Both the position numbers and the translations under genes were made by a program. From positions 124,001 through 188,000 of the forward strand of contig NIVC01001763.1 of NCBI GenBank assembly GCA_002269645.1: a DNA stretch of 64,000 bases, in the 5' to 3' direction. The notes below the pieces were generated by a model that was not told the origin of the DNA, did not search any database, and saw only the letters and a program-made list of their open reading frames with translations. Shown piece after piece: positions 5,704 to 48,848 of the stretch. Origin of the DNA: Macrostomum lignano (Eukaryota). Position 1 is the first letter of the stretch. Each line of letters opens with the position of its first letter.

Positions 5704-5722
5704 AGATCTACCACCGACTCAC

Positions 5723-6495
5723 TTGTCCTTGCCGTCAGCTGCCCGATCCCGCTGTCTCCGGTTCTTGAACCAGTTGGACACCTGAGTGGTGGTCAGGCCG
5801 GTCTCCTCCGCCAGCTCTTTCTTCTCCCTCGGTGACGGGTAGGGGTTGTGCGCGTACCACTCGCGCAGCACCTGTCTGGACTTCTCCTTGAAGCAGTAGG
5901 AGGTCTCCTCGCCATCCCAGATGGTCCGGGGCAGCGGGAACTTCCGCCGCACCCGGTACTTGGCCACGGCGCCGAGCGGCCGGCCCTTGACCTTCTCCTC
6001 CTCGCGATAGTGCGCGTTCAGCCACAGAGCCTGCAGCTGCGGGTGCAGCCGTGGCGAGAAGTTGTGACTCTCCAGAATCCTGTAGAGCTCCTTGTAGTTC
6101 TCCCGGTGCGAGGCCACGTAGGCCTTGGCGGTGAGCACGGACTCATTGCGGTGCAGCTGCTCGCAGGGCGGCAGAGACCAGATCAGGCGGGACAGGCGGT
6201 CCATGTCGCCGGAGCTGCGCATGACTTCGCACACGCAGGCCACCTGCTCCTGGGTGAACCGGCACCCGCCGCTGCCAGCGCCAGCGGCGCCGCCGACTGA
6301 GCATTCGGAATCATCCGCTGACAGAATCGGCTGGTGATGCTGCGGGATCAGCTGATGAAGCTCCTGGCTCTGAGTTGCCTGCTGAGGAGTCTGGGTCTGC
6401 TGTTGTTGCTGCTGCTGTTGCAGAGTCTGCTCACTGTAGGCTCGGTCTTCGACAGATGCGCAGGGTAGATAACAGTCCTGGGACTGCTGGATCAT
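5723..6495 (-). CDS. six1/2: Six1/2 (sine oculis) class homeobox gene, paralog A, coding exon 1 (Six domain + homeodomain); exon 2 not found in the window
   Basis: Translation contains [12 protein letters not shown]...[24 protein letters not shown]...[16 protein letters not shown]. The ETSY tetrapeptide marks the Six1/2 class. The exon ends AAG GAC AA|GTGAGT, a phase-2 donor at the position of the conserved Six1/2 intron. Confidence 0.96.
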
Positions 6496-14835: not shown

Positions 14836-16944
14836 TGCATACCATACCATAATAGTGTCTATCTTGCTGTCGGTCAGTCAGTCCTTTGTCCTACACCTTC
14901 ATTCCAGCCGCCCGACCGTCCCCGCAACACTATCCAACCCCCCTCAGTTGCTGATCCCATCGTTAACACACTGCAGGACTCCCAACCAGCAGGCCCGGCT
15001 GAAGTCTCAAACTCTCCAGTTCAAGCCCGGCAGCTCTCGGGCAGTTTGTCAGCGGCGATCAGTGAAAACTGAGCCGCTTATCAGAGTCCAGCATCGGTGG
15101 AGGTTCGGCCAGCTAATGAGCCCCGGCCAGGACCGCCCCCACCGACTGCTCAGGACTGCGAGGCTTCTGTCGAGGAGTTTCTCCCGCCGCATGCCGACAC
15201 AACCCCTCATTATACACTTTTAATTCTCGATTACCCCCCCACCCCGCATCCTCACTCACTGGGCAAGACGGCGGGCCCCGATGGTGTAAAAATATCTACA
15301 AAGACTAGTTTAGGTCTTTGTCCATTTGAGAGGCGCTCAACAAGATTACAAATTACAACTTGTCAAGCCTGATAAGTGCTTTCCAGTGTATCGAAAATAA
15401 TAAAACAACAGATGAGAGAGAGAGACCTGCCCAGTGTTTAGCGCACATTTAGCTGCCAGTTGACTTTTCAATAATTGCGAAGGCATTGTTGAAAAACTGA
15501 AATTCCAAACACACCGAGAGAGAGAGAGAGAGAGAGATTAGCAATATTGCGCTGGATTGGACTCAAGATTGGGCGATATCTTTCAAACCGAGTCTTAACA
15601 ATGCCCATGGCAACCTGCCAGCCTCGGGGCATCCTGATTCTGTCAGCTTGCCTTAAACTTGACAGCTCATTTTACGATTGTTATAATGACTTTAAAAACG
15701 CTTCAAGTCCTTATCAAAATCAGATTTCGCATTGTTTCATAATGTGCCAAATATAGGCTTGTAATAACTATAACTTAGGCCAAGCGTACGCCATTTGACG
15801 GTCAAGTGTGCAAACGATACAATTTAATTACAAAACAAAAAAGACAATTAGCAATCAACATACGCAGCCCCCGATAATGGCGCAATCAGTGGGACAGTCC
15901 GATGAAATCGTTGCATGTAAAATAGCATTTTTGCGACTATTTTACAATTCTGCAACTCAACTCACTGACTCCACAGTCCCTCTCGGCCGCATTACAGGCA
16001 AGTCGTTCTAGTCGTTACAAAGTCACGATAACGCTTTCAACGGGACAAGCGCTAACATTTGACTCTCAATATGAGGTGAAAGCAAATAATAATTAATCAA
16101 CCATTCAAACCTCTTAACCCCTATCATACTACTGATTTCCAAAAGTTCAGTAGTACGGCACGAATATAATCTGTTTCTTTTGAACTACAAAACAAAAAAT
16201 CGCTAATAACAATCTTTTGAGTTTGAATAGACAAAAAAACAGTAAACATCTAAGCATACGCTGACAAGCTACTGATTCTTTTCAGTAGCATAACAAGCAC
16301 ATTCCACCTACTTCTTACTAATTTAAAAAAGAACAATTTTTAAAACATTCAACACTAAAGTTGATACCAATTTTTGAGGATTGTCCCAGAAAGCAAATAA
16401 AAGATAATAATTAGGAGGAATCAGATGAAGCAGCACAAATAGCAGCAATGCGTGTTCCCAATCAGTTTATCACAGGCAGAATAGACAAGCGAGTAAGCGC
16501 ACAGAATTGCAAGTTTTCAATTAGAAAATCAAATCGAATGGAATATATGCATTACAATCGCAATTTTTGTAGTGAAGTGCCAGGTATTACAGTTTTTCTT
16601 TACAATAGAATTACTATATATAGTTATAAACTAATCAATTCAAATTTATGCACACAAGAATGAGGCTGAAGCGTGTGAGTTCGGATTTCCAAACAAAGAA
16701 TGATATACACTTTGAAGCAGGGCAATTTGTAAGGTTTTGGCACCAGTTGATTGCTAATGGTGGTGTTGGTAAATTTAAATTGAAATTATTTTGCAATCAA
16801 AAAGCTTAAATTAAAAAGGAATTAAATGATAATTCAAGGTTAGCCAGGATAGCGCTATGAAATACTGAGTACAAGACTGAAATGGATGTCTGGGGGGGGG
16901 GGGGGAGCGCCAGGAAGGAACTGACGCTAGTGTGTCAATTCTCA

Positions 16945-17852
16945 ATTGCATCAGTCACAATTGTCAGTCATATCAATCACAATTGTCAGTCACATCAGTC
17001 ACGACTATCAGTCACATCAAGCACAATTGTCAGTCACATCAGTCACGACTATCAGTCACATCAATCACAATTGTCAGACACATCAAGCACAATTGTCAGT
17101 CACATCAATCACAATTGTCAGTCACATCAATCACAATTGTCAGACACATTAATCACAATTGTCAGACACATCAAACACAATTGTCAGACACATCAATCAC
17201 AATTGTCAGTCACATTAATCACAATTGTCAGACACATCAAACACAATTGTCAGACACATCAATCACAATTGTCAGTCACATTAATCACAATTGTCAGACA
17301 CATCAAACACAATTGTCAGACACATCAATCACAATTGTCAGTCACATTAATCACAATTGTCAGACACATCAAACACAATTGTCAGACACATCAATCAAAA
17401 TTGTCAGTCACATTAATCACAATTGTCAGCCACATCGAGCACAATTTTCAGTCACATCAATCACAATTGCCAGTCACATTAATCACAATTGTCAGTCACA
17501 TTAATCACAATTGTCAGACACATCAAACACAATTGTCAGACACATCAATCACAATTGTCAGTCACATCAAGCACAATTGTCAGTCACATTAATCACAATT
17601 GTCAGTCACATCAATCACAATTGTCAGTCACATCAATCACAATTGTCAGTCACATCAAGCACAATTGTCAGACACATCAATCACAATTGTTAGACGACAC
17701 ATCAATCACAATTGTCAGTCACATTAATCACAATTGTCAGTCACATCAATCACAATTGTCAGTCACATCAATCACAATTGTCAGTCACATCAATCACAAT
17801 TGTCAGTCACATTAATTACAATTGTCAGTCACATCAAGCACAATTGTCAGAC
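16945..17852. repeat. 22-bp minisatellite (TCACATCAATCACAATTGTCAG)n
   Basis: 22-bp period, giving a 22-aa repeat every three units in the ORF track. Confidence 0.96.
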
Positions 17853-18003
17853 ACAAGTTTCCAGCTACACCGAAATTGTCAGACCCGGGAGAAAGCACGG
17901 GAATGGCAGGCGCGAACAGGTCCCATAAAGTACAGAGGGTGCAGACAGAGGCATTGAAGAGGAACTGCAAACTGTTACGCAAAAGATCTGCGGGACCAAT
18001 GCG

Positions 18004-18645
18004 TCAGATCAGCCGCAAACCTTTGGCAAGCCGCACGGTGGCCTCCGGCCAGTAGGGCCCGCCGGCATACGCGGCGCACAGGTCGGGTTTGGCCCGACAA
18101 TACGAGGCCGTCATGGCCAGGGCCATCACGAGAGCAAACGCCAGAGTCAGCAGGGTCAGCAGGCCGACCGAGCCAGCCAGTTCCTGTTGCTGCTGCCGCT
18201 GATAGTAGTACTGATGATGGTGCGCATGCTGGCTGGGATCCGGGCGGAACCAGTAGCGATGCTCGATCTTCTTGGCGAATCGAACCCGCTTGGAGGCCGA
18301 CGCTGCTGACGAAGGCGTCGTTGCGCCAGACGGCGAGGCTGCCAAAGGCGGCGACGATGTCGAGTCGAGCAGCAGCGACGCCTGCGACGGAGATTTCAGA
18401 ATGGACACTGGCCGAGTTGTCGACGCCTGGCGCTGGCTGTCGTCAGCCGATGCGCACTCCGCCTTGATGTCCTCGACGGCCGAGGGGATGTCGCCGGCTG
18501 GCGAGCTCTCGTCAGGACGCCGTCTTTGTCGGAGCTGCACCTCGTCGGCTGAGTCGGCATCGACAGCGGAGTTGCCGTCGATGCTGGCAGTGAACTGGCT
18601 GGATGGCGCCGTGATTTCGGCATCCGCCTCATCCGCGGTCGTCAT
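18004..18645 (-). CDS. Single-exon 213-aa predicted single-pass membrane protein with PP1-docking SILK and RVxF motifs, consortin C-terminal-like
   Basis: GC-rich non-repetitive ORF from ATG to stop. SILK at residues 81-84, SKRVRF at 118-123, hydrophobic helix LAGSVGLLTLLTLAFALVMALAMTASYC at about 156-183, then a short Cys-containing tail. Confidence 0.8.
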   Translation of the reverse strand: MTTADEADAEITAPSSQFTASIDGNSAVDADSADEVQLRQRRRPDESSPAGDIPSAVEDIKAECASADDSQRQASTTRPVSILKSPSQASLLLDSTSSPPLAASPSGATTPSSAASASKRVRFAKKIEHRYWFRPDPSQHAHHHQYYYQRQQQQELAGSVGLLTLLTLAFALVMALAMTASYCRAKPDLCAAYAGGPYWPEATVRLAKGLRLI

Positions 18646-20064
18646 TCAAATTCCAAGTCCAATTTCAATTTGCTTCACACCTGCAGAGCTGCAGCGCCGC
18701 TTTTTCTATGCTGCTTTGAATTTCTATTCAAGAAATTTTCTGTCTTATTTGTTTCGACTTCAATTTGCAGACTCTCAGATTTACAAAGTATAAATATAGA
18801 TAGTTGAACATCAACACAAAATAATTTTTTTAAGGTTGGCAGTAGAGCTCCGCCCTAGCTATGGATATGACTACAGGAAGTTGAAGTTTTAGACAGATAC
18901 GGATATGGTCAGATGGTCAGGATATGGATATACGGAATATGAGGGGAGCACATAAGTCCCTAGAATTAAGGACTCGAGCAACAAAGACAGAAATATGTTG
19001 AAACTAAAAGGTTGGAATTAGGGAGCTTGCCTGCACTGAGCAATGCTGACTTATATATTTGGCAAAGTTATTTCAAGACTTATTGTGCACTAATTGAATA
19101 GTAATGGAATACTATGTTAAACAATATAGTATTTCTTCTTTTTTATTTCAACTTTCATACAAAGTTCATCAAATCAAATTATATACCATAATTGTATAAG
19201 AGAAGTTGTATCTGTACTACATTAGAAACTAATTGAATATTATATTTTTGCTATGGTTTATGCATTAATATTACTTAGGCTGTTAGGCAACCTATGCATA
19301 TTCTAAATATCTAGACTTTGTCTATGTTTTTTGAAATATAATTTATAAATCATTATTTTCATCATTATTATTGAAATGAATCTACAAATAAACATATTCT
19401 ACATAGTACATAAAATATTTTTTGTCTATATGCTATGTAGCACCTAAGGAAAAATGAATTATTAATATAAAAAATAAAGTTTAAAAACTCTTACTTTGCT
19501 ACTAATAATACTTTTGACAAAAACAGTATATATATATGACTTAGGTTAGAGTCTAGATTATTGATTGAATTTAATATATTATAGAATAAATTGCAAGATA
19601 TATACTTAGACTTGAAGCAAGAAAACTACACAAATGTTGAGGGATCATTTTATACTATTTTAATTTTTATAGCCATATATTATAATAAACATGAAATAAT
19701 AATCATAGATTTCATTTAAGCCTATTTAAAACATTGTTAATTTGGCAATTATATTCTTTACTTTGTTATATTACTTTTATAAATTAAATACTTGCTTAAT
19801 AATAATAATTGTATTAGTTAAAATTATATAGTTTAGCTTAAGTTAGTTTCAATGGCTATAGTATGGCACAAAAATGGCACAAATATACAAAAAAGTAGTC
19901 TTTAAAATTAAAAGTAGTAAAATTAGTTTGTATTGATATTCTAGATTTGCCTATTACAACTACCAAGCAGATTGCATCTGCCATCAAACAGACACCTGAT
20001 TGCAAGCTTTACAAAACTAAGTGTCTTGCTATTATGACTAACAAATACAATGCAATGGATAAAT

Positions 20065-20318
20065 AATCAGCAGTCCCAGTGCGTGACAACAATTTGTCTA
20101 TGGCTCGCGTCTACTGGCACTTGCCAGACAATCATTGTCACGCACCGGGACTGCTGATTATTTATCCATTGTTTAGCAATTTGATTATCATTATTCACAT
20201 TTTTTAATGCAGAACAATCCATTACTACAAACAATGCATTGTCTGTAGGATTGTCAAACAGAAAAACAATGCAAAGAATCAGCAGTCGCAGCACGTGACA
20301 ACAATTTGTCTATGGCTA
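20065..20318. repeat. Small inverted plus direct repeat set (AATCAGCAGTCCCRGTGCGTGACAA)
   Basis: A copy at about 20065-20105, an inverted copy at about 20130-20160, and a diverged direct copy at about 20277-20318. Confidence 0.7.
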
Positions 20319-20379
20319 AATTGCTAATTGCTAAACAATGAGAGGTTCCAAAGGTGGCACTATTGTCTGACTGCACAAT

Positions 20380-21765
20380 GACAAAGGCTTCCCAAAGTTG
20401 GTTGATTTTGGTGACTGCTCCTTGCATCATGTGGCAAATGTGGCAATGTGAAGCCTCAGACCTTGAACAGAATACTGAGAGCGCCTAGTCAAGGACATCA
20501 ATAGCTACTTTGTTGTTAGAACCTGAGCAAGGCTATTTTGACATCCTCACTGAGAGCTTCATTGAAGTAAAGAAGCTTGCCTTCATCTACCATGTAGACA
20601 TATCTAGCTACAAGTTCACACTGTCATAGAGCAGGTGCTTCATATGTACCTGCTGCTTCAGTTGCACTTTTTGGAGATAAATATAAAAGCTTTAGGGTTA
20701 TACTGCAAAGATCAATAAGCTGGTAAGCCTTCCAATTTGCAAGTCATTTGGGTCTGCCTCTGTACTAGGCACCTTAGGGGGATTAAGTGCATCGTACGCT
20801 GGTCCCACCCCAAGTAGCTCTGCGTCGTACGCTCAAGCAGCCTAGTCCAGACGGACACCACATCATACGCTTGTCAGTGGAGGACTGCAGCCAGGGTCAG
20901 TATGTTAACCCGGGTCTAGGAGAGGGGCACAAAAGGACTGAGCCCTTGAGCCCCATCACCACACTAGCAAAGTTGCCTGATGCAGACTCAACCTTTAAAA
21001 GTAAACCAAGCCAATACCAAAATCTGGCTTTCACCCTACAGAATTTAGTAGGGTTAGCCAGCCAAGCTGGTTTTTGTTGACCTATCTGCCAAGGACTAGC
21101 AGATCTGTTTTGCCACAATGAAAGCATTTTTTTCAAGTTAGTACCCAGAAGTTAAAAGAGTACCTTCCTTTAAAAGGCAAAATTCTTTTTGTCTGGCAGA
21201 TGCTAGACTTATCAAAGCAGTCACAGCTCCTTGGTGAAGTGGGCTAGAACACTGACTAAGAATCTGCCTAGCATTTTCACCAAAATTGAAATTGGCAGTA
21301 TCAAAGTAAAGGCACATCTCCACTAGGATGGTTCTTGCTAGTCTTCTACCAAAACCAAGTCCACCATATCCATTGACATGATCAGCTTCTAGGAGGCTGG
21401 CCAATACTGGCCAATGCCCTCTGCTTATAAAGCTTTTATGAGTACAACCTGTATTGCCCTATGGAAATGTCAAAGTGTAATGGATTTTTAGCCAGCTAAA
21501 GGACATTGTCACAAAAATTGCAGAGTTTGATGCCATTTCAGTCAAGGCACTTACTGTCACTTGTTTGTGCAAGACTACTCAGGAGTGGACTGCTGCAATG
21601 TTGCCCATCATACCAATGCTATAGAACATGTGCATTACTACACATACTGCTTATTGTCAACAACTGAGAGACAAAGCTGCTGCTGAGAAGCACAAGCATT
21701 TAAAGAAGCTATTGGGCATTGTGTTTTCTGAAGAAAGCAAGTAAACAGCTAAACACCCTGCAACT
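20380..21765 (+). pseudogene. Decayed hAT-family transposase relic with stops and frameshifts; central part apparently inverted
   Basis: Plus strand: KLVDFGDCSLHHVAN (CxxH motif) near 20390, and PYGNVKV*WIFSQLKDIVTK near 21457, resembling the hAT dimerisation motif PHSNAxVERxFS. The intervening transposase-like frame at about 20960-21410 reads on the minus strand. Confidence 0.5.
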
Positions 21766-21862
21766 CAAGGTCAATATAAAGGCAAAAAAGTTTGAAGAAA
21801 AGATCAAAAAGGCTGCAGCACTGCAGCTATTAGATGAGGTTTGGCAAAAAACTAAGAATAGG

Positions 21863-22701
21863 CAGTGTTGGGCAAGTTACTCAAAAAAGTAACTTGCATT
21901 ACTGTAACTTAAGTTACCCAGTTTTAAAAAGTAACTTACGTTAGCCTAGTAACTTTAGACAAAAACTTGGTAACTTTTAAGTTACTGTCCGTTACTCACT
22001 TCCGTTACCCATGTTATTAGCAAAATTTTCTGCTTTTTTCACATTGCACATTTTTTCACATTGTTGTTACCGAAATTTGCCATTGGGCATTGGGATTAAC
22101 CGATTAACAGACAGAGACAGGAATTGGCGACACGATGAGGCAAGTAGAAGGACCAATGGGCAATGGCAATCAATAATTAAAATTATAAATGATAAAATAA
22201 ACGAATATCAATAATTCAATAGAGTAAAATAAATAGAACTGTATAAAATGGTGTAGTGTACTGCAGTGCCAGTGGAGGGTCTTGTGGAGGCTACAGATGA
22301 ATTTCTTTCTTTGGTTGTTTGTTTGAATAAAACTTGAAAATTTTTATAGTAACTTGAAAATGAAAGGCAATATTTTCCTGAAATTATAACAAAGTAAAAC
22401 ATGTTTCAAGTATTTCTTTATTAACTAAAGCGCAATACCATGTGATACTATTCACTTAATTTTGAATTAGGAATGAAAAATGCAAAAACATGTGACAACT
22501 GGCGTAATAGCTAAGCATTTCAGATTAAAATTTAAATACTGCGATTGTTGCAAAGTAACTGTAACGGACTTCCGAAATTTGAGTAACTTACCGTTACTCC
22601 GTTACTAAAATATAAAAGTAACTTGCGTAAGGAACGCTTTACGAAAAAGTAACTTGCGTTACCATTTGCAAGTTACTCGGTAATGGAAGTGCCCAACACT
22701 G
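21863..22701. mobile_element. Non-autonomous hAT MITE (839 bp)
   Basis: 12-bp TIR CAGTGTTGGGCA...TGCCCAACACTG; perfect 8-bp TSD AGAATAGG (21855-21862 and 22702-22709); many subterminal GTAAC/GTTAC pentamers. Confidence 0.92.
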
Positions 22702-23529
22702 AGAATAGGAATAGGAAAAAAATAAGAATAGGCTAAATAAAGGAGCATTTTTTATAAGAAAAAAGCAATTTATAATTTTATGCATATTTTTTTAAACAAC
22801 ATAGAGTTTCTTTGTTAGTTATATAATAAATAGTATAGTATATAGACTTGCCACTTGCTTAGATTTTTAAACTAGACGATAGATACAAAAATGAAAATTT
22901 TTGCAAGACAAGAAATTTTATTTATGCAAGATTAAGAAAAGAGGAGTTTTTATTAATTCTAAGCTTGTGTCTTTGGCCAAAAACAATGGATCTAATGACT
23001 TATAACTAAATCCAATATCAATTTGTGCTCCATATTCCCAAATAAGAATAAGCTAAATAAAGGAGCATTTGTTTGCACTACACAGATAGGTAGGAAATGG
23101 ACCATCTAGTGTTTTAGTAAATTAGTATCTGTGAACTAGACTTATACTAGATAATATTTTGGTCACTACTTACTAAGTAGTATATAGACTTATAGATATT
23201 ATTAGACATTAAAACTATGTTGTGACTGTCAACATCTTTTTGATAAATATATATAAACAAGCTGTTGAAACCCGCGGATTTTGAACCCGGGGAATTCTAA
23301 TCCCCGGAACTACTTTTGCATGTATTCTGAAATCTAAGGCCATACACAAACAAACTAATAGGAGGATAGAGGTAGACATAAAATGGAGCACATTTGTGTA
23401 AAATTAGGGTTTGAGGCAAACATTGATATTGTTTGTTGGGATACTCCACAGAATGCCAGGCAATGTCTGTCTGACTCTAAAACATGTATTGGCAAACTCT
23501 GGCCTCTCCCTGACTCTCCCTATGTCCCT

Positions 23530-24063
23530 TGGATCCTTTAAAATTTCTATCATCTCTTTCCTTCCTTCTCTCTCATCCCTCGTCTCTCCTCTCTCTTCTC
23601 TCCTCTCTCCTCTCTTCTCTTGTATCTTCCCTCATCTCTCTTCCCTATTCTTTTCTCTCTCCTCTCCTCTCTCCTTTCTACTTTTCGTTTTCTCTCTGCT
23701 CTCCTCTCTCCTCTCTACTCTTTCGTTTTCTCCCTCCTCTCCTCTCTCCTCTCTCCCCCTCTTCTCTCGTCTCTTCCTTCTCCTCTCTATTCTTTTCTCT
23801 CTTCTCTTAACTCTCTCCTCTACTCTCTCATCTCTCCTCTCTACTCTTTCCTCTCTCTCTCCTCTCTCCCCTCTTCTCTCGTCTCTTCCCTCACCTCTTT
23901 CCTCTCTCTCTTTCCTCTCATCTCTTTTCTTGTTTTATATCTTCTCTCTCCCCTCATCGCTCGTCTCTTCCCTCACCTCTCTTCTCTCTCGTCTGCTCTT
24001 TCATCTCTCCTTTCTCTTCTTTTATCTTTTCTCTCTTATCTCTTCTCGTTTCTATCTGCTCTG

Positions 24064-24158
<95 letters not shown>

Positions 24159-24880
24159 CCAATCTCTCTTCTCTTCTCTACTCTCTCCCCTCTTCATTCT
24201 CCTATTTCCTCTTCTCTCTCCCTGTCTCTCCTCTCTCCTCTAGTCTCTGTAATCTCTTCTCTCTTATCTCTCCTCTGTTCTCTGTACTCTCCCATCTCTC
24301 GTCTGTTCATCTGCTCTTTCATCTGTCATATTTACTCTCTTATACGTTCTCTCACTTATCTCCTCTGTACTCTTCTCTTTCACCTCTTCTGACTCCTCTC
24401 TTCTTTTCTCTTCCCTCTTCTATACTCTCTCTCCTCTATTATCTTCTCTCGTCTCTCTGCACTCTCCTCTCACCTTTTTCATCTCTCATCTCTTCTTTCA
24501 TCTGTCTCATCTCTACAATCTCATCTTTTTCCTCTCTCCTCCTCTTCCCTTTACTCTCTCATCTCTCTTTTCTCCCATCTTCTTACACCCCTCTCTTATC
24601 TCTATCTCTTCTCTTCTCACCCCTTCTCTCCCCCTCTTATCTCCTCTCTTTTCTATCCTTTCTACTCTCTCCTCTCTAATCTCTCCTCTCATCGATCCTC
24701 TGTCTCATCTCTCCCCTCTTCTCACCTTTACTCTTTCCTCTCCCTACTTTCTCCCCTCCTCTCGCTTCTTCCTCCCTTCTTCTCTGCTCTCTCCTCACCA
24801 CTTGTCTCTCCTCTTATATTCCATGTTTTCTCATACCCCCCTCTCGCCTCTCCTCTCTTCTAATAGTCTATTCCTTCTCC
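23530..24880. repeat. Degenerate CT-rich low-complexity tract with a pure (TC)n core at about 24068-24152, possibly the interior of an old hAT MITE
   Basis: Pyrimidine-rich strand; flanked by degenerate CATGTATTGGCAAACT (about 23482) and AGTCTGCCCATTCCTG (about 24962). Confidence 0.85.
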
Positions 24881-25097
24881 TTTCCACTCTCATCTGGCCC
24901 GCACATAAGCTGGATACTGGATTCTTTATCTGGCTTTTGAAGAAAAAGTCTGCCCATTCCTGCTTGGAAAGCCAGTTTGTGGGACGTAGTACTCTCATGG
25001 CTGTTCTCATGCTTTGATCATGTCGTCTTTCTTGCCAATTGGCAATCCTGAAAGGAATTTGTGTATTTTCAGCTCCACTGCAGTCTGCATCAGTCTA

Positions 25098-26107
25098 ACA
25101 ACCAAGGAAATACGCATTTCTTAGGAGGACATTTAAAATTTAAAATACTTTTAAGAGAAACCTAAAATTTCCATGGTGTGACTTAAAATTTAGTAGGGTT
25201 ATATTGCATTGTATCGCCTTTTCATAAATCTTTCGCTTTTACAAACCATGATGGATTCCCTCGATTTGCCATCCACTGTTAAACTGCTGCAGAGTTTACC
25301 AATACAGAGGACAGTGGTTAGAATTTCTCACTAAACTGTCATGGCTAAACGTAGCCTCTCCACACGCGGGGGTGACAGACTACAGAGAAGGCTATTAAAA
25401 AGTTATTCCAAAACACTGTACATTTGCTATGTACATTCAGCCCTATCGCCTGACCCTTCGTCTGGGCTGGGGGAATGAGTGAGTGAGTGGCACAAACAAC
25501 AGAAAAAGCAGACAAACTTCACACGCTTACAGTTTCTTTTCTGAATGAGTTACAGAGTTGAAACTTTACATTTAGATAGAGAATGAGTCAATAAAGAATT
25601 GTGTCAAGTTTAAAGTCAATCGCTTTACGTGGAGCTAGCGTATGGCAGCTGAAAGTTAGTTAATTTTGAAACCCCTTTTATACATCTGGGCCCAGATCGG
25701 GAAAGAGAGGCAGGCGGGCGGAGGTTGGGGTGGTTGCTATGCTGAAAAAAACAGCCTAATTTTAAAAGTGCACAGCGCCGTTCAGGATTAACTTTGAGAC
25801 TCTAAATTTTACATGATTGTGCCAAAATATTTGAAGATTGTCTGTGTCAAATTTGAAGAGAATCGGTAAAAGTGAAGCGGCGCTATGGAGGATTTAGTGA
25901 AAAAATTGCGTATTTTGAGCAGTTTTTTGTACTTTTAGGTAGAAAGACTTGAGTCTAGGAAATTTAAAGGTAGCCTAAGACATTCTCCGTAGTAAGTTTA
26001 GGGTGGGTGTAAAGTTTGGTGTCATTTGGTTGAGCGGTTTGGGAGTCCATAGCGATCAAAATTGTCCACAGACAGACACACAGAGTTTTGATTTTTATAC
26101 GTAGAGA
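25098..26107 (-). mobile_element. Probable non-autonomous Helitron-like element
   Basis: Minus-strand 5' end A|TCTCTACGTATAAAAATCAAAACTCTGTGTGTCTGTCTG is typical of Helitron 5' ends. An imperfect hairpin (CCTAAGAAAT-GCGT-ATTTCCTTGG) lies just before a GTTGT|T 3' end, which is non-canonical and uncertain. Confidence 0.5.
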
Positions 26108-26481
26108 TGTATCATTATAAAGGAGCAAGCTTTATACCTACAATATAGTATAGAATTTAGCAAAAGAATAAGCATTATTTATATTTTTGTTAAATAAAAT
26201 GCTTTGTTTTATAAGAATCACTTTGAGGCTTTTTGGGGCTATATACCTTATACACTAATGGTGCAATTTTTTGCATTGGCACAAAAATTTCAAGGGGCTT
26301 TGCTATAGCCATTGGTTAGTTTAAAGGTAATAGGCAATCCAAAAGAACAAATTTCCAAAAGCACTTCTATATTAACATTTTATACTATATGAACTCTTGG
26401 TGGCTCGCTTCAAAAATAAACCTTCAAATTGACCTTTAAATTGACATCTAGATATAGTAGTAAGACAAAACTCAATATTAT

Positions 26482-26521
26482 TTGCGACGCGTTTCGGCTA
26501 AAACTAGCCATCTTCAGGCAC
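26482..26521 (-). ncRNA. Minimal type I hammerhead ribozyme in the inverted pLTR (intact-looking copy)
   Basis: Minus strand reads UGC CUGAAGA U GGCUA-GUUU-UAGCC GAA AC-GC-GU C GCA. It has the CUGANGA/GAAA core, a 5-bp stem II, a palindromic ACGCGU stem III, a GUC cleavage triplet and a 3-bp stem I. Confidence 0.8.
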
Positions 26522-26628
26522 TATCGAACAGAATTTGTTTCAACCTATTAAATACTGTGTAGACGACAAAATCAGGTATTGAAAAGATATAAAAGGACTA
26601 AAGGATCAATGTACAGTATAGCAATGTT

Positions 26629-27518
26629 TCAATTTTTTCTGCAATTTTTCAACACAATAAACGCCACCCATCCTAACATTAAATTCACCGTGGAATATGG
26701 TGGAAAGAAACTACCGTTTCTTGACATCGAGATCCATCTGAAGGACTGCGCTATTGAGACCGAAGTGTATCGCAAGCCCACATTTACTAACTTGATGCTT
26801 AATTTCCAGGCGTTGTGCCCCAGGGAATGGAAGACGGGAGTCATTCGTTGTCTGCTTCATTGTGCCTATATAGTATGTTGCTCTTGGTCGTTGCTGCACA
26901 ACGAGTTTACCAACATTATCAATATTCTCACTGCCAATGGATACCCTATCAACTACATCATGAAGGTTATTGGTAATTTCTTAGATGAAAAAATTGAAAA
27001 AAAAGCTTAAACCTAAGCGGCCAGATAGAGAACCAGGAGAACAAATCTTGACTCTTCCTTTTTTGGGCAACTCTTCGATTGTGTTTAAGAGGCAAATTCG
27101 CAAAACTTGCCAAAAATTCTTTAAGACTAAGATTCATGTAGTGTTCTGTACTCATAAAGTCAGTCAATTTGTTGGGAGTTTAAAGTCTCGTGTTCCATGT
27201 GCTCTCAAGGCAGGTGTCATCTATCGTTTTCGTTGCTCTGTTGACCAGAGCATTACCTACATTGGTAAAACCAAGCGACACCTACTCACGAGAGCCAAGG
27301 AACATAGGCAACAAAACTCTCTGATTCATGAACATTTGCTGCAATGCCATGGTTGTTGTGATGAGCCAGACATAACCTCTCATTTCAAGGTCATAGACAA
27401 CAGAAAAAATGAGCATAAACTTAACATTCTTGAAGCTCTGCACATTAAGTTACACAAACCCACTCTCAATGTCCAACTATCTGGAGGAAGTGTGAGTGAA
27501 CAGCTGTTGGTGTTCTAA
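26629..27518 (+). pseudogene. PLE reverse transcriptase C-terminus/thumb plus GIY-YIG endonuclease, frameshifted in an A-run near 27000
   Basis: HPNIKFTVE..LPFLDIEI..TEVYRKPTFT..NGYP, followed by GVIYRFRC..TYIGKTKR.L.TR.KEH..LEALHIKLHKPTLN.Q. Confidence 0.93.
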
Positions 27519-27545
27519 GCTAGAGTACATTTGGGGCGCATACGC

Positions 27546-27598
<53 letters not shown>

Positions 27599-27736
27599 CT
27601 CTGTCCTGTCATTCCACAAAAAATATTATGAACATTGCTATACTGTACATTGATCCTTTAGTCCTTTTATATCTTTTCAATACCTGATTTTGTCATCTAC
27701 ACAGTATTTAATAGGTTGAAATAAATTCTGTTCGAT

Positions 27737-27777
27737 AGTGCCTGAAGATGGCTAGTTTTAGCCGAAATGCGTCACAA
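27737..27777 (+). ncRNA. Hammerhead ribozyme copy in the 3' pLTR, degraded by two CpG transitions
   Basis: TGCCTGAAGATGGCTAGTTTTAGCCGAAATGCGTCACAA: GAAAC>GAAAT and GTCGCA>GTCACA relative to the left copy. Confidence 0.65.
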
Positions 27778-27872
27778 ATAATATTGAGTTTTGTCTTACT
27801 ATTATTTGTTAAGAGTGCTTCTCTACCGCAATTCTAGATATAGTAGTTGGTGCTTTAATTGCTAATGCTATA

Positions 27873-28044
27873 CATACATGCGCAACTTTGGGAATCACCC
27901 GGCCGTTTCTATTGGCAACACACGCATGTAAGTCGCTATTGGCTGAGAGCAGTCACGTGACTACTATTCCGTCCAATAGCGACTTACATGTGTGTGTTGC
28001 CAATAGAAACGGCCGAGTGAATCCCAAGGTTGCGCCCAAGCATG
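27873..28044. mobile_element. 172-bp palindromic MITE with CAT...ATG termini (P/Galileo-like or similar)
   Basis: About 70-bp inverted arms (GCGCAACTTTGGGAATCAC...GCTATTGG versus CCAATAGC...GTGAATCCCAAGGTTGCGC); 8-bp TSD ATGCTATA (27865-27872 and 28045-28052). Confidence 0.82.
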
Positions 28045-29217
28045 ATGCTATATTATCAATATTACTACTAATATTAATAATAAAAAGCATTGAATTTATA
28101 TATTGCCATCTAATTAACTATGATTAGGCCCTATTTTAAATAAGATATTGCTATAATGCAAGTGGTTGCAAGCTGCTGCATAGTAAAGTTAGGCATAGCT
28201 TGAGTACAATATGTATTTACTTATAATAAACATAGGAGCTGCTAGGCTATATATGGAAACTAGTATCAAGTAATTGTTATTTTATTTTGATAGATGCAAT
28301 TAAGGTCAAAGACCTTAGCCAAATTCACTTAAAAGTTAAAAGCCTTGCCTTAATGTAAATTTTATTTAATTTTATTCCTCTATCTCTAAGCCCAACATTT
28401 TTTATTATAAACAGCTATAATTAAAGTTTTCTTATCACTATCAGTTCTGTTTTTCTATATATATTACGAGTAGTATTGGCACAATTTTGAAAATCTAAAT
28501 TTTCTGAATATTAAAAAGGTCTAAGGACAATTGGTCTATTGGCTTCTCTTACATATGCAACTTTGGTTCCACATGGTAAAAACTCATCAAATACTGTGTT
28601 GATATGTATTGCACATTTTAATGTGGAATTCAATGTGGGATTCAATGCAGGATTTCCTACACTATAATCTCAACTTGAGTTCTTAAGCCTATTCAACATG
28701 GAATTCAATGTGGGATTCAATGCAGAATTAAATGCGGGATTTCCGGCACTATAATCTCAACTTGAGTTCTTACGCCTATTCAACACGGAATTCAATGTGG
28801 GATTCAATGCGGGATTTCCTACACTAAACTCAACTTGAGTTCTTAAGCATATTCAGCATGGAATTCAATGTGGGATTTCTTGCACTAAACTCAACTTGAG
28901 TTCTTAAGCATATTCAGCATAGAATTCAATGTGGGATTCAATGTGGGATTTCCTACACTAAACTCAACTTGAGTTCTTAAGCATATTCAGCATAGAACTA
29001 GCAATCTACGCCCCCCGTTGGGGAGCCAAAGAAATGCTATACACGTTTTTTTAATAAGCTACATGTATCCTTGAAATCTTAAAAAATCTCCTGTCAAACC
29101 TTGTAAGCCTTGACATGTCAGTAATTCCCCCCCAGCTTTAACATATCAACTTCCCCCCTTGACATCTCAGCAATGCCCCCAATAAGCCTTGGAAATCTAA
29201 AAATATCTGTCAACCTT

Positions 29218-29262
29218 CTAACCCTAACCCTAACCCTAACCCTAACCCTAACCTAACCCTAA
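29218..29262. repeat. Interstitial telomere-like (CCCTAA)n tract
   Basis: Five perfect TAACCC units, one TAACC, and one further TAACCC. Confidence 0.9.
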
Positions 29263-30039
29263 AGCATTGAAATTTCAGTAATTCTCTCTAAGAGTCATTA
29301 TAGCACTACTACAGCATTATAGCGATAAGCTTCTTTTATTTTTTACATAACGCTTCTTTTATCAGCGATCCCTCGCCTGAGGAGGCATCAAATAATGTAA
29401 TAAAAAGTTTTCAATAAACTACATGTAGCTTCTGACTTTAGCCTTGAAATCTCATTTATACCCCCGTGAGCCTTGACATCTCAGCTATTCCCCCCGTCCG
29501 TAAGCCTTGACATGTCAGCGATGGCCCCCATAAACCTTGAAATCTAAAAAATCCACTGTTAACCTTGAAACCCGATAAAATATAACCCTCAACCCACACC
29601 TGACCTAAACCTAACTTTAACCCAACCTAAAGCCTTGAAATCTCAGCAATTCTTCTCCCCTAAGCCTTGACATTTTAGTGATTCCTTCTTTAAGAATCAC
29701 AGCACTATAACGATTTCCACCTACCTTTGACATCGTAGCAATTCCCAAATGAATCTTTTAACTTCGACATGACTTTTCTTTTATGTATACATAGTGCTAC
29801 TTTTATTTTTTACATGACTCTTCTTCTATCAGCGCCCCCCCGTGGCGAGCCAACAAAGAATGCAATAAAAAATTGAGTAAAGTACATGAACTTTGAAGTA
29901 GCTTCTGACTTTTGCTTTGAGATCCCAGAAACAACCCCCCCCTCGTAATCTCAGTTATTCTCTGAGAGCCTTTACGTCTCAGTTTTTCTTCCCAGCACAG
30001 CATTATAGCTGCATTTCATTTTTACATGACATCCTTCAT

Positions 30040-32120
30040 GTCTGACATGACGCTTCTTTTGATTTTTACATTACACTTCTTTTATTCTTCCATGATGCTT
30101 CTTAATTTTTTAAATGATGCTTTCATTAGTTTTTAAATGAGGCTTCTATGATTTTTTCATGACGCTTCTATGATTGTTTACATGACGCTTCTATGCTTTT
30201 TACATGACGCTTTTATGCTTTTTACATGACGCTTCTATGATTATTTCATGACGCTTCGATGATTGTTTACATGACGCTTCTATGATTGTTTACATGATGC
30301 TTCTACGATTTCTGCAGGATGCTTCTATGATTTTTACATGATGCTTCTATGATTTTTTCATGACGCTCCTATGATTTTTTCATGACGCTTCTATGATTGT
30401 TTACATGACGCTTCTATGCTTTTTACATGACGCTTCTATGCTTTTTACATGACGCTTCCATGATTTTTTACATGACACTTCTATGATTTATACATGATGC
30501 TTCCATGATTTTTTCATGACGCTTCTGTGATTGTTTATATGACGCTTCTATGCTTTTTATATGACGCTTCTATGATTGTTTACATGACGCTTCTATGCTT
30601 TTTATATGACGATTCTATGATTGTTTACATGACGCTTCTATGATTGTTTACATGACGTTTCTATGATTTTTTCATGACGCTCCTATGTTTTTTTCATGAC
30701 GCTTCTATGATTTTTTCATGATGCTTCTATGATTTTTACATGACGCTACTATGATTTTTACATGACGCTTCCATGATTTTTTACATGACACTTCTATGCT
30801 TTTTACATGACGCTTCTATGATTATTTCATGACGCTTCTACGATATCTGCAGGACGCTTCTATGATTTTTTACATGACACTTCTATGATTTTTTACATGA
30901 CGCTTCCATGATTTTTTTTCATGACGCTTCCATGATTTTTTACATGACGCTTCCATGATTTTTTCATGACGCTTCCATGATTTTTTACATGGCACTTCTA
31001 TGATTTTTTACATGACGCTTCTATGATATTTTCATGACGCTTCTATGATTTTTTACATGACGCTTCTATGATTGTTTACATGACGCTTCTATGATTGTTT
31101 ACATGACGCTTCTATGATTGTTTACATGACGCTTCTATGATTGTTTACATGACACTTCTATGATTTTTTACATGACACTTCTATGATTGTTTACATGACG
31201 CTTCTATGATTTTTTACATGACACTTCTATGATTTTTTACATGACGCTTCTATGATTTTTTACATGACACTTCTATGATTTTTTACATGACGCTTCTATG
31301 ATTGTTTACATGACGCTTCTATGATTGTTTACATGACACTTCTATGATTTTTTACATGACACTTCTATGATTGTTTACATGACGCTTCTATGATTGTTTA
31401 CATGACACTTCTATGATTTTTTACATGACGCTTCTATGATTGTTTACATGACGCTTCTATGATTTTTTACATGACGCTTCTATGATATTTTCATGACGCT
31501 TCTATGATTTTTTACATGACGCTTCTATGATTTTTTACATGACGCTTCTATGATTGTTTACATGACGCTTCTATGATTGTTTACATGACGCTTCTATGAT
31601 TTTTACACGATGCTTCTACGATTTCTGCAGGACGCTTCTATGATTTTTTCATGACGCTTCCATGATTTTTTACATGACGCTTCTATGATTTTTTACATGA
31701 CGCTTCTATGATTTTTTACATGACGCTTCTATGATTTTTTACATGACGCTTCTATGATTTTTTACATGACGCTTCTATGATTTTTTACATGACGCTTCTA
31801 TGATATTTTCATGACGCTTCTATGATTTTTTACATGACGCTTCTATGATTGTTTACATGACGCTTCTATGATTTTTTACATGACGCTTCTATGATTGTTT
31901 ACATGACGCTTCTATGATTGTTTACATGACGCTTCTATGATTTTTACACGATGCTTCTACGATTTCTGCAGGACGCTTCTATGATTTTTTCATGACGCTT
32001 CCATGATTTTTTACATGACGCTTCTATGATTTTTTACATGACGCTTCTATGATTTTTTACATGACGCTTCTATGATTTTTTACATGACGCTTCTATGATT
32101 TTTTACATGACGCTTCTATA
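30040..32120. repeat. 23/24-bp minisatellite (CATGACGCTTCTATGATTTTTTA)n carried inside the Helitron
   Basis: About 85 tandem units; a recurrent CTACGATTTCTGCAGGA variant. Confidence 0.97.
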
Positions 32121-34877
32121 ATTTTTTAGTTTTATTTTTGGTGTTAAAAAGCTTTAATTAAAAAAATTCCACTCTCTAAAAATTCGAACCATCGTCCCTG
32201 CATTTAGCAGTCAGTCTGTTTACCTCTAGGCTAGCTCTCATCGTTTTGATAACATGAATTTTAGCACTTATAATTATAAGTTTCAAAACTCCAAGCATCG
32301 AGTAAATCACACGAGGCAGTTATGACATAATCAATTTCTCAGTCAGTCAGTATCAGTTAACAATATGGTTACGCAATCTAAATCACGTCTGGTGTTTCGC
32401 TTCTACACTGCATTTTCAATACTGTGACGCAATTCAAGTCGGAGTTACAATTCAGTTATGATGCAATCTATTTCAGAATCAGAATTCAACCAGTCAATTT
32501 TTTTCTAGCATTCTTACAATGCATTTCAAGTCGAAAAGTTTGCTTGACCTTTGCAAAAAAGCATGTTTTTCGAGTATTTAATGCCTTTAGCATCGAGCAA
32601 TTTCTTAGCCAAGACACATGTACCGTCACGGGAAAATTTCTGATCGAACAGTGCAAGTCTCATGAAAATCGGTTAAGCCTTTTTTTCTCTAATCGATTAC
32701 AAGCAAGCAAGCAAGCAAGATTTTCATTTTTAGTATATAGGATTCAATGTGGGATTCAATGTGGGATTTCCTACACTAAACTCAACTTGAGTTCTTAAGC
32801 ATATTCAGCATAGAATTCAATGTGGGATTCAATGTGGGATTTCCTACACTAAACTCAACTTGAGTTCTTAAGCATATTCAGCACGGGATTCAATGCAAGA
32901 TTCAATGCGGGATTCAATGCAGAATTAAATGCAGGATTTCTCATACTATAATCTCAACTTGAGTTATTAAGCCTATTTAGAACAGAATTCAATGCTGGAT
33001 TCAATGCGGGATTCAATGCAAAATTCAATGTGGGATTTCCCACACTAATCTTAACTTGAGTTCTTAAGCCTATGCCTATTCAATGCGGGATTCAATATAA
33101 GAAATAAATCCCACATTTAATTCTGCATTGAATCTTGCATTGAATTCCACATTGAATTCTATGCTAAATAGGCTTAAGAATATTAACTATTAATTAGGAA
33201 AGTAAAAAAGAATATGGTTAAGTTTGTTTAGAATGTATTCTTTAATGCTTGATTAGATTTTTGCAGAAAATTCTGCATTGAATCCCACATTAAATTCCAC
33301 ATAAAATGTGCAACACATATCAATGCAGTATTTGATGTGGTTTTTACTGTGCGGAACCAAAGTTGCATACATGTTTCTCTTATTGTTTCTTCATTGTAAT
33401 AATATGTTTTATGTTGCAACTATTTCATTTTAGAAGAAAAATATTTTAACAAAAAAGAGGAAATTAATTTTTAGTATTTTTTTATATATATTAAGTTAAA
33501 AAGAGCACTATATATTAAGCCAAGGGGCTATCTTCTATCTACTTTTTTAATAATTTTAGTTAGCCCTAGTTCTATTCAAAAGAAAATTTAATGTAAGTTT
33601 TTAGCCAAGGCCTAATTAATTAATATAAAGTCTCTTCTGGTTCCATTTTGTTTTTGTTTTTTTCTCACTGACCAGAATTGGCTATTTGTTTAATTTAATT
33701 GTCATTTTGATTTCTGTTTCTTTACTCTTTAAATAAACAAGCAACATTGATCTGGATTAAACTTAAACTAAAGTTACTTAGTTACATAGCATAGCTGATG
33801 CGATGTAACACTGCAACCCAAAATAAATACCCAAGACACTGCCTATGTGTGATGTATTCTCTAATTTTGATCTGGAATCAGCAAGAAATACTGTCATATC
33901 TAAGTCTTAGTCAACTAGGGCCTAATCAACGTAGTGATGATTCTTGTTACCCTGCCTTGCCTTTAAAGAAAATACATAATATAAAAATTTCTCGAAAAAG
34001 TCAAATTAAAATTTTACAACTTTTAACAAAAAGTTAAATCTTTTGAGCCTTATTAATTTCACTACGCCCTTCTAATTAAATGATAAGTAATCTTCTCTTT
34101 TTTCGGATATCTTCTACTAGCCGATTTACTCTGTTTCTGTAATTGAGCTGTTGCTGCGCATCTAATACCTTTCTGCCCTATGTGATTAATTGTCCTATGT
34201 CTAACAATAAACTTTTGGAAGAACTATTTATTGATTAGTTACTTGCTAATGTTTATAGTATCTGCAATATCTATAATATCTGCTATCATTTCAATTTTAT
34301 ATTGAAGTGTAAAGTACTGATCCTCGTATTTGTATAATTTTAGTTGGACTTGAACATTTGGCTTTAATTTATACCAGATCGACGTTTGCACATACAGTCG
34401 CCCTCTACAGTGTTTTTCTTTGTCATTTATTTTATATCGTCCGAAAGTATTCGAAAATAATAATTTCCCGACATCTAAACACAATTTCATTTTAATCGAT
34501 TTTGAGTTTAACGCTTGTGTTTGTTTAGACTAGCTAGGAGACATATAGAGTTCCCACAATTTAACATCTACGTTAGAGAACGTGAATTGATCTCTAATTG
34601 TAAATAGAATTACGAGTATGAAGAGTCTTACACTCTTACATATAATGCGTCAACTGTCGCATTTTGTCTATGGCAGGACGAGATCTCTGCATCTCCTGTT
34701 TCGTGCGCTCTGCATCTGCGTTGACAGCTATATTGTTGTTGCGTAGATTAAAAATTTAAATTGACCACCGCCTGAACCCTCTGCCAGTTTGCCTCTCTAC
34801 TCTTAAGAAAGCCCAAAGTCAAAGGAAAAGCTGTTGATTAAAAGTTCGACGAAACGCCCTTATTAGCCAGCTGATTT

Positions 34878-48805: not shown

Positions 48806-48848
48806 GGACAGACAGAGACATGAGAGCCCACAAGGATCCCCAACTCAC

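What the first reader, a model, noticed from the sequence alone, without database searches (positions are those of the whole stretch)
18004..18645. Compact membrane-anchored PP1-targeting protein resembling the consortin C-terminus
Seen: SILK (81-84), KRVRF (119-123) followed by KIEHRYW, a hydrophobic helix starting AGS and ending TASYC, and a second Cys seven residues later, all in one intronless 213-aa ORF. Known: SILK plus RVxF is a bipartite PP1-docking signature. As I recall, vertebrate consortin (CNST/PPP1R64) ends with the same order: SILK, SKRRVRF, GGS plus TM ending TALYC, then Cys. Inference: a minimal invertebrate consortin-like or new PP1 adaptor on Golgi/ER membranes, nested between the two Six genes.
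Basis: partly seen in the sequence, partly recalled or inferred. Interest (0 to 1): 0.74.

Follow-up and report, generated by a model that had tools for sequence, protein, structure and literature searches.

The report
Membrane-anchored PP1-docking protein candidate, flatworm
A small, annotated but unstudied gene of the flatworm Macrostomum lignano encodes a mostly disordered protein with a full set of docking motifs for protein phosphatase 1 and a membrane anchor near its tail. Its layout copies the end of vertebrate consortin, but kinship with consortin could not be shown.

Summary
Window 18004-18645 (- strand) is an intact 213-codon ORF with SILK (81-84), KRVRF (119-123), Tyr-Trp seven residues later, one hydrophobic helix (157-183, AGS...TASYC) and Cys190. 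The window is Macrostomum lignano. The ORF is an annotated gene with two further genomic copies (Mlig022277 g1 and g2).

It looks like a real gene:
- It forms a sharp GC island.
- Its codon-position GC pattern matches the neighbouring Six genes.
- Residues 77-213 show 5 synonymous changes, 1 replacement and one in-frame indel.
- The GenBank annotation of this assembly is built from RNA-seq transcripts.

SILK plus a strict RVxF in the right order arose in 1 of 400,000 composition-matched shuffles. The best reading is a C-terminally anchored adaptor that brings PP1 to a membrane.

Membership fails, though: there is no Pfam Consortin_C hit, a custom profile scores 8 bits, and hhalign gives 5% probability. 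Only a weak residual similarity remains in the helix and tail (P about 0.006-0.009). No homologue outside M. lignano was found, so motif conservation across species is untested. PP1 binding, topology and location are inferred, not shown.

The parts
18004..18645 (-). Complete 213-codon CDS plus stop (stop codon 18004-18006). It is an annotated single-exon CDS of Macrostomum lignano, the third copy of the gene family Mlig022277.
   Evidence: GC island of 64-66% against flanks of 20-43%. GC1/2/3 = 0.64/0.55/0.76, similar to the Six genes.
18418..18645 (-). Residues 1-76: an acidic (net charge -11), fast-evolving disordered N-terminal region with no signal peptide.
   Evidence: 8 replacements against 2 synonymous changes between copies, consistent with neutrality. 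pLDDT is mostly below 52. GC3 is 0.78 in frame.
18394..18405 (-). SILK motif (Ser81-Ile-Leu-Lys84), preceded by Pro-Val.
   Evidence: Invariant in all three copies. Aligns with the invariant VSILK of consortin. SILK is a PP1c docking motif.
18277..18291 (-). RVxF-type motif: Lys119-Arg-Val-Arg-Phe123.
   Evidence: Fits [K/R]-x0-1-[V/I/L]-x-[F/W] with basic residues before it (PMC10731240). Invariant in all three copies.
18247..18255 (-). Hydrophobic pair Tyr131-Trp132 (plus Phe133), seven residues after Phe123. This is a candidate PhiPhi motif.
   Evidence: Read from the sequence. The PhiPhi motif usually lies 5-8 residues C-terminal to RVxF (PMC10731240).
18097..18177 (-). Predicted transmembrane helix, residues 157-183 (AGSVGLLTLLTLAFALVMALAMTASYC).
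   Evidence: Hydropathy. AlphaFold2 helix 138-185 with pLDDT up to 94. No replacements between copies.
18007..18096 (-). 30-residue tail after the helix (residues 184-213), with Cys190 (window 18076-18078) seven residues after Cys183.
   Evidence: Short helices at 187-194 and 201-210 in the model. Only synonymous changes at codons 189 and 193.

Best explanation
This is a real, transcribed gene found so far only in Macrostomum lignano. Its product has about 156 disordered residues followed by one transmembrane helix and a 30-residue tail.

Proposed mechanism (inferred): the helix fixes the protein in an internal membrane with the N-terminal part in the cytosol. There the string SILK - 34-residue linker - KRVRF - 7 residues - YW docks onto the SILK, RVxF and PhiPhi pockets of the PP1 catalytic subunit. 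PP1 is thereby held at that membrane, as a targeting subunit does.

Shown here: the ORF, the motifs, their non-random co-occurrence, coding-type sequence statistics, constraint on residues 77-213, and the predicted disorder plus helix.

Inferred only: PP1 binding, N-in topology, which membrane is involved, and any substrate.
For: Evidence that the gene is real:
- The ORF is intact in three syntenic copies.
- The only length change is an in-frame 6-bp deletion in the Gln-rich linker.
- Codons 77-213 differ by 5 synonymous changes and 0 replacements between the window copy and g2. Under neutrality P = 0.002, and Fisher's test against the N-terminal half gives P = 0.007.
- GC3 is 0.76 against GC2 0.55, as in the neighbouring Six genes. 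The antisense ORF has a flat profile.
- A GC island coincides with the ORF.
- GenBank gene models of this assembly come solely from RNA-seq transcript assemblies plus TransDecoder (PMC5730564), so a transcript exists.

Evidence for PP1 docking:
- The motifs fit the published definitions of RVxF and PhiPhi.
- A designed peptide with the same order (SILK-linker-RVxF-PhiPhixF) binds PP1 at about 4 nM (PMC11536154).
- The combination occurs at 2.5e-6 or less in composition-matched shuffles.
- The motifs lie in a region with pLDDT below 65 and are invariant in all three copies.

Evidence for the anchor:
- A single hydrophobic segment at 157-183 and no N-terminal signal sequence.
- A confident helix in the model.
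Against: - There is no experimental evidence of PP1 binding. Short linear motifs have high false-positive rates in general.
- Conservation is known only among copies at least 96% identical within one genome, so motif conservation across species is untested.
- No homologue was found elsewhere.
- The charges flanking the helix are about 0 on the N-terminal side and +1 on the C-terminal side (read from the sequence). They do not support the N-in orientation that PP1 docking needs.
- The N-terminal 76 residues evolve as if unconstrained.
- Expression level and tissue are unknown. No paper mentions Mlig022277.
Confidence: 0.5

Rival explanations
1. The gene is a highly diverged true orthologue of vertebrate consortin. 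It would have been reduced to the C-terminal module (SILK, RVxF, transmembrane helix ending TAxYC, luminal Cys) and would have lost the long GGA- and connexin-binding N-terminal part. The mechanism would still be PP1 docking at a membrane, so this rival concerns ancestry rather than function.
For: - MAFFT aligns P-VSILK, VRF, the Gly before the helix, T-A-x-Y-C and the following Cys collinearly with six consortins, at 21-30% identity over 137 residues.
- The consortin profile scores the helix region higher than 99.4% of segment-preserving shuffles (31 of 5000 reach it).
- With the PP1 motifs held fixed, the rest still scores at z = 3.0 (14 of 2000). Helix plus tail alone gives 44 of 5000.
- hhalign gives P = 0.0073.
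Against: - No Pfam PF15281 match at E<=10. The profile score of 8.1 bits is far below any family threshold. hhalign probability is 5%.
- Invariant consortin residues are absent: the GG before TALYC, Cys64, D83, S86, F92, N95, F98 and H112-W113.
- The Cys spacing is 7 rather than 10 residues, and both linkers are much longer.
- There is no DxxLL motif.
- Every organism-named hit of the consortin profile among 5.8 billion proteins is a vertebrate, so no intermediate exists.
- The P values are post hoc, since this similarity is what prompted the finding.
Confidence: 0.15
2. The gene is a real small single-pass membrane protein with some other role. Its SILK and RVxF matches would be fortuitous or used for something else, and it would not bind PP1 in vivo.
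For: - Motif-only predictions are often wrong.
- No cross-species conservation is available.
- The flank charges do not favour a cytosolic N-terminus.
- The constraint on residues 77-213 could reflect the helix and tail rather than the motifs.
Against: - The joint occurrence of SILK, strict RVxF and the hydrophobic pair in canonical order and spacing is 2.5e-6 or less in shuffles.
- Basic residues precede the Val and the region is disordered, as in genuine PP1 partners.
- The same order gives nanomolar binding in a designed peptide.
Confidence: 0.28
3. The ORF is not a protein-coding gene. It would be a chance open frame in a GC-rich transcribed segment that TransDecoder annotated.
For: - At 65% GC, stop codons are rare. 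A 173-aa ORF is also open on the opposite strand.
- The N-terminal half shows no purifying selection.
- No domain or homologue is known.
Against: - The frame-specific GC3 excess matches neighbouring genes and is absent from the antisense ORF.
- The C-terminal half has 5 synonymous changes against 0-1 replacements, and the indel is in frame.
- The GC island has the exact extent of the ORF.
- All three copies keep the frame.
Confidence: 0.07

Closest known systems
Consortin (CNST), C-terminal domain, Pfam PF15281 Consortin_C
   Same: The elements come in the same order: VSILK, a basic run plus RVRF, a small-residue/Ser start of a single transmembrane helix, the helix ending T-A-x-Y-C, and a second Cys shortly after. 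Consortin is a membrane protein of the trans-Golgi network (PMC9157791).
   Different: - There is no significant profile match.
- About half of the invariant consortin columns are not matched.
- The linkers are 34 and 33 residues against about 20 and 14. The Cys spacing is 7 against 10.
- The tail lacks DF..N.DFY...HW.
- The protein is 213 aa, with no long N-terminal region and no DxxLL GGA-binding motif.
- Consortin hits are vertebrate-only in the search made here.
- I know the PPP1R64 alias of CNST only from memory. No held paper confirmed it.
SILK plus RVxF PP1 adaptors (Inhibitor-2, KNL-1, MEL-28, PAR-2, CSRNP) and the designed PhosTAP peptide
   Same: SILK lies N-terminal to RVxF in a disordered stretch, followed by a hydrophobic pair. 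This is the arrangement that docks on PP1c.
   Different: Those proteins are soluble or bound to the kinetochore or nuclear envelope by other means, and none shares sequence beyond the motifs. Here the string is fused to a C-terminal transmembrane helix. The 'xF' that follows PhiPhi in PNUTS and PhosTAP is not matched exactly (YWF here).
PNUTS / spinophilin type RVxF-PhiPhi string
   Same: RVxF is followed after 5-8 residues by two hydrophobic residues (PMC10731240). Here it is RVRF-AKKIEHR-YW.
   Different: No Arg motif lies at the PNUTS spacing, and there is no other shared domain.
Membrane-anchored PP1 targeting subunits such as PPP1R3A (GM), which has an RVxF motif and a C-terminal membrane anchor (from my own knowledge, not tested here)
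   Same: The logic is the same: a docking motif in the cytosolic part and a C-terminal hydrophobic anchor that holds PP1 at an internal membrane.
   Different: There is no glycogen-binding domain, no sequence similarity, and the protein is much smaller.

Membership tests
Consortin (Pfam PF15281, Consortin_C) | Significant match to the family profile | tested here: not met
   No PF15281 hit at E<=10 for the whole protein or for two C-terminal fragments. A profile built from 12 real consortins scores 8.1 bits. hhalign gives probability 5% and P = 0.0073.
Consortin (Pfam PF15281, Consortin_C) | Invariant VSILK and K/R-R-V-R-F upstream of the helix, in that order | tested here: met
   These are generic PP1 docking motifs, so they do not discriminate.
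Consortin (Pfam PF15281, Consortin_C) | Helix with invariant L..LLC..TV..S.GGTALYC, then D...S..C..F..N..F and a terminal HW | tested here: inconclusive
   Matched: Ser before the helix, LL.LL, T-A-x-Y-C and a following Cys. Not matched: C64, T67, V68, S71, G73, G74, D83, S86, F92, N95, F98, H112 and W113. The Cys falls at +7, not +10. Shuffle tests give P about 0.006-0.009.
Consortin (Pfam PF15281, Consortin_C) | Long cytosolic N-terminal region with DxxLL motifs that bind GGA adaptors | tested here: not met
   Only 76 residues lie before the SILK region, and there is no DxxLL or [DE]xxxL[LI]. The GGA-binding DxxLL of consortin is described in PMC13581114.
Consortin (Pfam PF15281, Consortin_C) | Trans-Golgi localisation and connexin sorting | not testable with these tools
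   This needs imaging. From my own knowledge, connexins are a chordate family, so that function is not expected in a flatworm.
PP1-interacting proteins using the SILK-RVxF-PhiPhi code | RVxF: [K/R]-x0-1-[V/I/L]-x(not P)-[F/W] with preceding basic residues, in a disordered region | tested here: met
   K119-R-V-R-F123. The definition is in PMC10731240. pLDDT is 49-61 around the motif.
PP1-interacting proteins using the SILK-RVxF-PhiPhi code | SILK ([GS]-I-L-[KR]) N-terminal to RVxF | tested here: met
   S81-I-L-K84, 34 residues before K119. The motif's role is described. The consensus and the usual spacing range are from my own knowledge of the PP1 literature.
PP1-interacting proteins using the SILK-RVxF-PhiPhi code | Two hydrophobic residues 5-8 residues after RVxF | tested here: met
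   Y131-W132, seven residues after F123.
PP1-interacting proteins using the SILK-RVxF-PhiPhi code | Physical, RVxF-dependent binding to the PP1 catalytic subunit | not testable with these tools
A binding assay is needed.
Tail-anchored / C-terminally anchored membrane proteins | No signal peptide, and a single transmembrane segment close to the C-terminus with a short tail | tested here: met
   The only hydrophobic segment is 157-183 and the N-terminus is acidic. The tail is 30 residues, at the upper edge of the usual definition. The helix is confident in the model.
Tail-anchored / C-terminally anchored membrane proteins | N-terminus in the cytosol | tested here: inconclusive
   The flank charges are about 0 (N side) against +1 (C side), which does not decide the orientation (sequence).

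The most novel reading that the evidence does not exclude
The consortin C-terminal module (SILK, RVxF, helix ending TAxYC, luminal Cys) may be an ancient bilaterian membrane anchor for PP1 that predates vertebrates and connexins. This flatworm gene would be its minimal form. The ancestral job of consortin would then be PP1 recruitment, with connexin sorting added later.
Probability: 0.13. Interest if true: 0.6.

Novelty: new member of a known kind. Interest (0 to 1): 0.35.

Why it matters
PP1 gains its specificity from hundreds of mostly disordered partners, and these are hard to find by homology. A 213-residue natural protein that joins the full SILK-RVxF-PhiPhi string to a membrane anchor would be an unusually simple targeting subunit. 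It sits in an animal where transgenesis and RNAi work, so it could be tested directly. If the consortin link were real, it would recast a poorly understood vertebrate protein as part of an older PP1 system. If neither holds, this is one more species-restricted hypothetical protein.

Tried and rejected
- Pfam scans of the whole protein and two C-terminal fragments at E<=10 gave only sub-threshold matches: CbtA (14-16 bits against a cut-off of 30.7) and LCE6A. I attribute these to the His-rich stretch plus helix and reject them.
- A word-indexed search of 5.8 billion proteins found only the M. lignano paralogue.
- An exhaustive phmmer search of 1.84 billion representatives found that paralogue plus two repetitive low-complexity proteins, P0002 and P0003. 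These match the acidic N-terminal region, and I reject them.
- A PDB sequence search with residues 77-155 found nothing below E = 1.
- A metagenome contig scan found no relative.
- A consortin profile search for invertebrate members listed only vertebrate sequences, many of them single fish exons. 33 weaker hits were not shown.
- Literature searches for Mlig022277, PPP1R64, C1orf71 with PP1, and consortin with PP1 or RVxF found no paper linking them.
- The original consortin paper (PMC2796891) is not held.
- No fold search was run. The model is mostly disordered (mean pLDDT 59), so any matches would be meaningless.
- A transposon origin is rejected, because the three copies sit in collinear flanks.

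Full report
**What is there**

The ORF is at window 18004-18645 on the - strand: 213 codons from ATG to stop.
- SILK at 81-84.
- KRVRF at 119-123.
- KIEHRYW at 126-132.
- One hydrophobic stretch at about 157-183, beginning AGS and ending TASYC.
- Cys190, seven residues after Cys183.

No other segment is hydrophobic, and the N-terminus is acidic, so there is no signal peptide.

**Source and copies**

The protein is 96% identical to 'hypothetical protein BOX15_Mlig022277g2' of Macrostomum lignano. The window ORF is itself a called gene on contig NIVC01001763.1 of assembly GCA_002269645.1. A third copy, Mlig022277g1 (211 aa), lies on another contig. The three loci are collinear in their flanks. 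They are therefore duplicated genome segments, which this assembly is known to contain (PMC5730564), and not a mobile element. In every copy the called CDS range equals the ORF length, so the CDS has no intron.

**Is it a gene?**

- The ORF coincides with a GC island of 64-66%, set in flanks of 20-43%.
- GC at codon positions 1/2/3 is 0.64/0.55/0.76. The two Six genes (0.63-0.64/0.43/0.82-0.83) and a third neighbouring gene show a similar pattern. The overlapping antisense ORF is flat at 0.56/0.54/0.61.
- The window copy and g2 differ at 15 codons. Codons 1-76 carry 8 replacements and 2 synonymous changes. Codons 77-213 carry 0 replacements and 5 synonymous changes.
- Copy g1 adds one replacement (S112L, in the linker) and a 6-bp in-frame deletion in the Gln-rich stretch.
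- About 29% of random point changes in the C-terminal part would be synonymous, so 5 of 5 has P = 0.002. The two halves differ by Fisher's test with P = 0.007. The N-terminal part looks neutral.
- GenBank gene models for this assembly derive only from RNA-seq transcript assemblies with TransDecoder ORFs (PMC5730564). A transcript therefore exists, although I could not see its level or ends.

I put the chance that this is a real coding gene at about 0.9.

**Shape of the product**

AlphaFold2 was run without an alignment. It gives no confident structure for residues 1-137, a long helix at 138-185 with pLDDT up to 94, and two short helices in the 30-residue tail. Net charge by segment is as follows:

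| Residues | Net charge |
|---|---|
| 1-76 | -11 |
| 77-156 | +6 |
| 184-213 (tail) | +3 |

**The PP1 reading**

- KRVRF fits the RVxF definition [K/R]-x0-1-[V/I/L]-x-[F/W], with basic residues before it.
- Y131-W132 lie seven residues after Phe123, inside the 5-8 residue range given for the PhiPhi motif (PMC10731240).
- A designed peptide with the order SILK-linker-RVxF-PhiPhixF binds PP1 at about 4 nM, with all motifs seen in the crystal structure (PMC11536154).
- In 400,000 shuffles of residues 1-156, SILK and a strict RVxF in the right order and spacing arose once. With the hydrophobic pair added, they never arose.
- All three motifs are invariant in the three copies. With copies this close, that says little.

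The best-supported mechanism is that the cytosolic disordered part docks PP1c while the helix holds the complex at a membrane.

The weak points are these:
- There are no binding data.
- There is no cross-species conservation.
- The charges flanking the helix do not favour the N-in orientation that the model needs.

**The consortin link**

I used a recalled human C-terminal fragment only as a seed. It retrieved 54 real proteins, all carrying PF15281. Their alignment gives the consensus GLVSILKKR - about 20 residues - SKRRVRF.EPDD.LDQDEVGG[GD]SCLLL.LLCL.TVVISVGGTALYC..GD..S.VCTDF..N.DFY...HW.

The tests for membership came out as follows:
- Pfam finds no Consortin_C match at E<=10.
- hhalign aligns only the helix region, with P = 0.0073 and 5% probability.
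- A profile of 12 consortins scores 8.1 bits, a score reached by 31 of 5000 segment-preserving shuffles.
- In semi-global alignments with the PP1 motifs held fixed, the rest reaches z = 3.0 (14 of 2000). Helix plus tail alone gives 44 of 5000.
- MAFFT does place P-VSILK, VRF, TAxYC and the next Cys in register. However, about half of the invariant consortin columns are unmatched, both linkers are much longer, and the Cys spacing differs.
- The protein has no DxxLL motif.
- A profile search of 5.8 billion proteins listed only vertebrate consortins, many as single fish exons.

SILK-RVxF is shared by unrelated PP1 partners, so only the helix and tail signal is specific to consortin. That signal is weak and post hoc. 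The gene works like the consortin tail may work, but I do not file it as a consortin. I give homology about 0.15.

**Searches for relatives**

Nothing was found outside M. lignano. This holds for the indexed search, the exhaustive phmmer search of 1.84 billion representatives, the PDB search and the metagenome contig scan.

**Context**

- Both flanking homeobox genes carry a SIX1_SD domain and a homeodomain with the ETSY tetrapeptide. From my own knowledge, ETSY marks the Six1/2 class.
- Both Six genes lie on the - strand, as the ORF does.
- The ORF is 11.5 kb from one Six gene and 30 kb from the other, in repeat-rich intergenic DNA. It is not nested in an intron of either.
- Homology between the copies starts only about 240 bp upstream of the ATG.

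**Verdict**

This is a plausible new PP1 membrane adaptor of a known kind, resting on sequence logic alone. It has a consortin-like layout, but kinship with consortin is unproven.

Noticed in passing
window 16949-17855: A minisatellite of 41 copies of a 22-bp unit (CATCAATCACAATTGTCAGTCA, 89% matches) starts about 150 bp beyond the ORF's stop codon. It is present at the two other loci with different copy numbers. It produces several long spurious ORFs on the + strand (16882-17592 and others). It may lie in the 3' UTR.
   Followed up: partly
window 5719-6495 (-) and 48845-49540 (-): There are two Six1/2-class homeobox genes (SIX1_SD plus homeodomain, ETSY tetrapeptide). They are 77% identical over the conserved part and lie in the same orientation, 42 kb apart. 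Both ORFs stop just after the homeodomain, so further exons may follow.
   Followed up: partly
window 34878-35639 (+): An annotated 255-aa (253-aa ORF here) Gln/Gly/Cys/Met-rich low-complexity protein with no Pfam match. It is 96% identical to the neighbour gene of the two other loci. It is the ORF's conserved upstream neighbour on the opposite strand.
   Followed up: partly
window 18883-34198: The window holds about 12 kb more DNA between the ORF and its upstream neighbour than the two other copies do (15.3 kb against about 3.1 kb). The extra DNA is repeat-rich: CT-rich low complexity at 23.5-24.7 kb, 22-23-bp arrays at 30.0-32.1 kb, and 73-75-bp repeats at 28.6-29.0 and 32.7-33.1 kb.
   Followed up: partly
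window 26454-27805: A pair of 175-nt inverted repeats, 97% complementary, flanks about 1 kb that holds an ORF with a GIY-YIG nuclease domain (26985-27518, E = 2.5e-6). It looks like a small mobile element.
   Followed up: no
window 46020-48074 (+) and 57113-58063 (+): Two long ORFs give repetitive, low-complexity matches only. One is extensin-like at 91 bits, below its cut-off of 105. The other matches a beta-roll repeat family at 40 bits. They are probably repeat-driven open frames or repetitive secreted proteins.
   Followed up: no
window 18272-18793 (+): A 173-aa ORF runs antisense to the gene. Its codon-position GC profile is flat (0.56/0.54/0.61), so it is most likely a by-product of the GC-rich coding strand opposite.
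   Followed up: yes
proteins P0035, P0039, P0074-P0079, P0114-P0126 (vertebrate consortin hits): In fish, the SILK-RVRF stretch and the transmembrane stretch are on separate exons. Many database 'proteins' are single exons or read through that intron, which inserts about 30 unrelated residues. The flatworm CDS has no intron at this point.
   Followed up: partly
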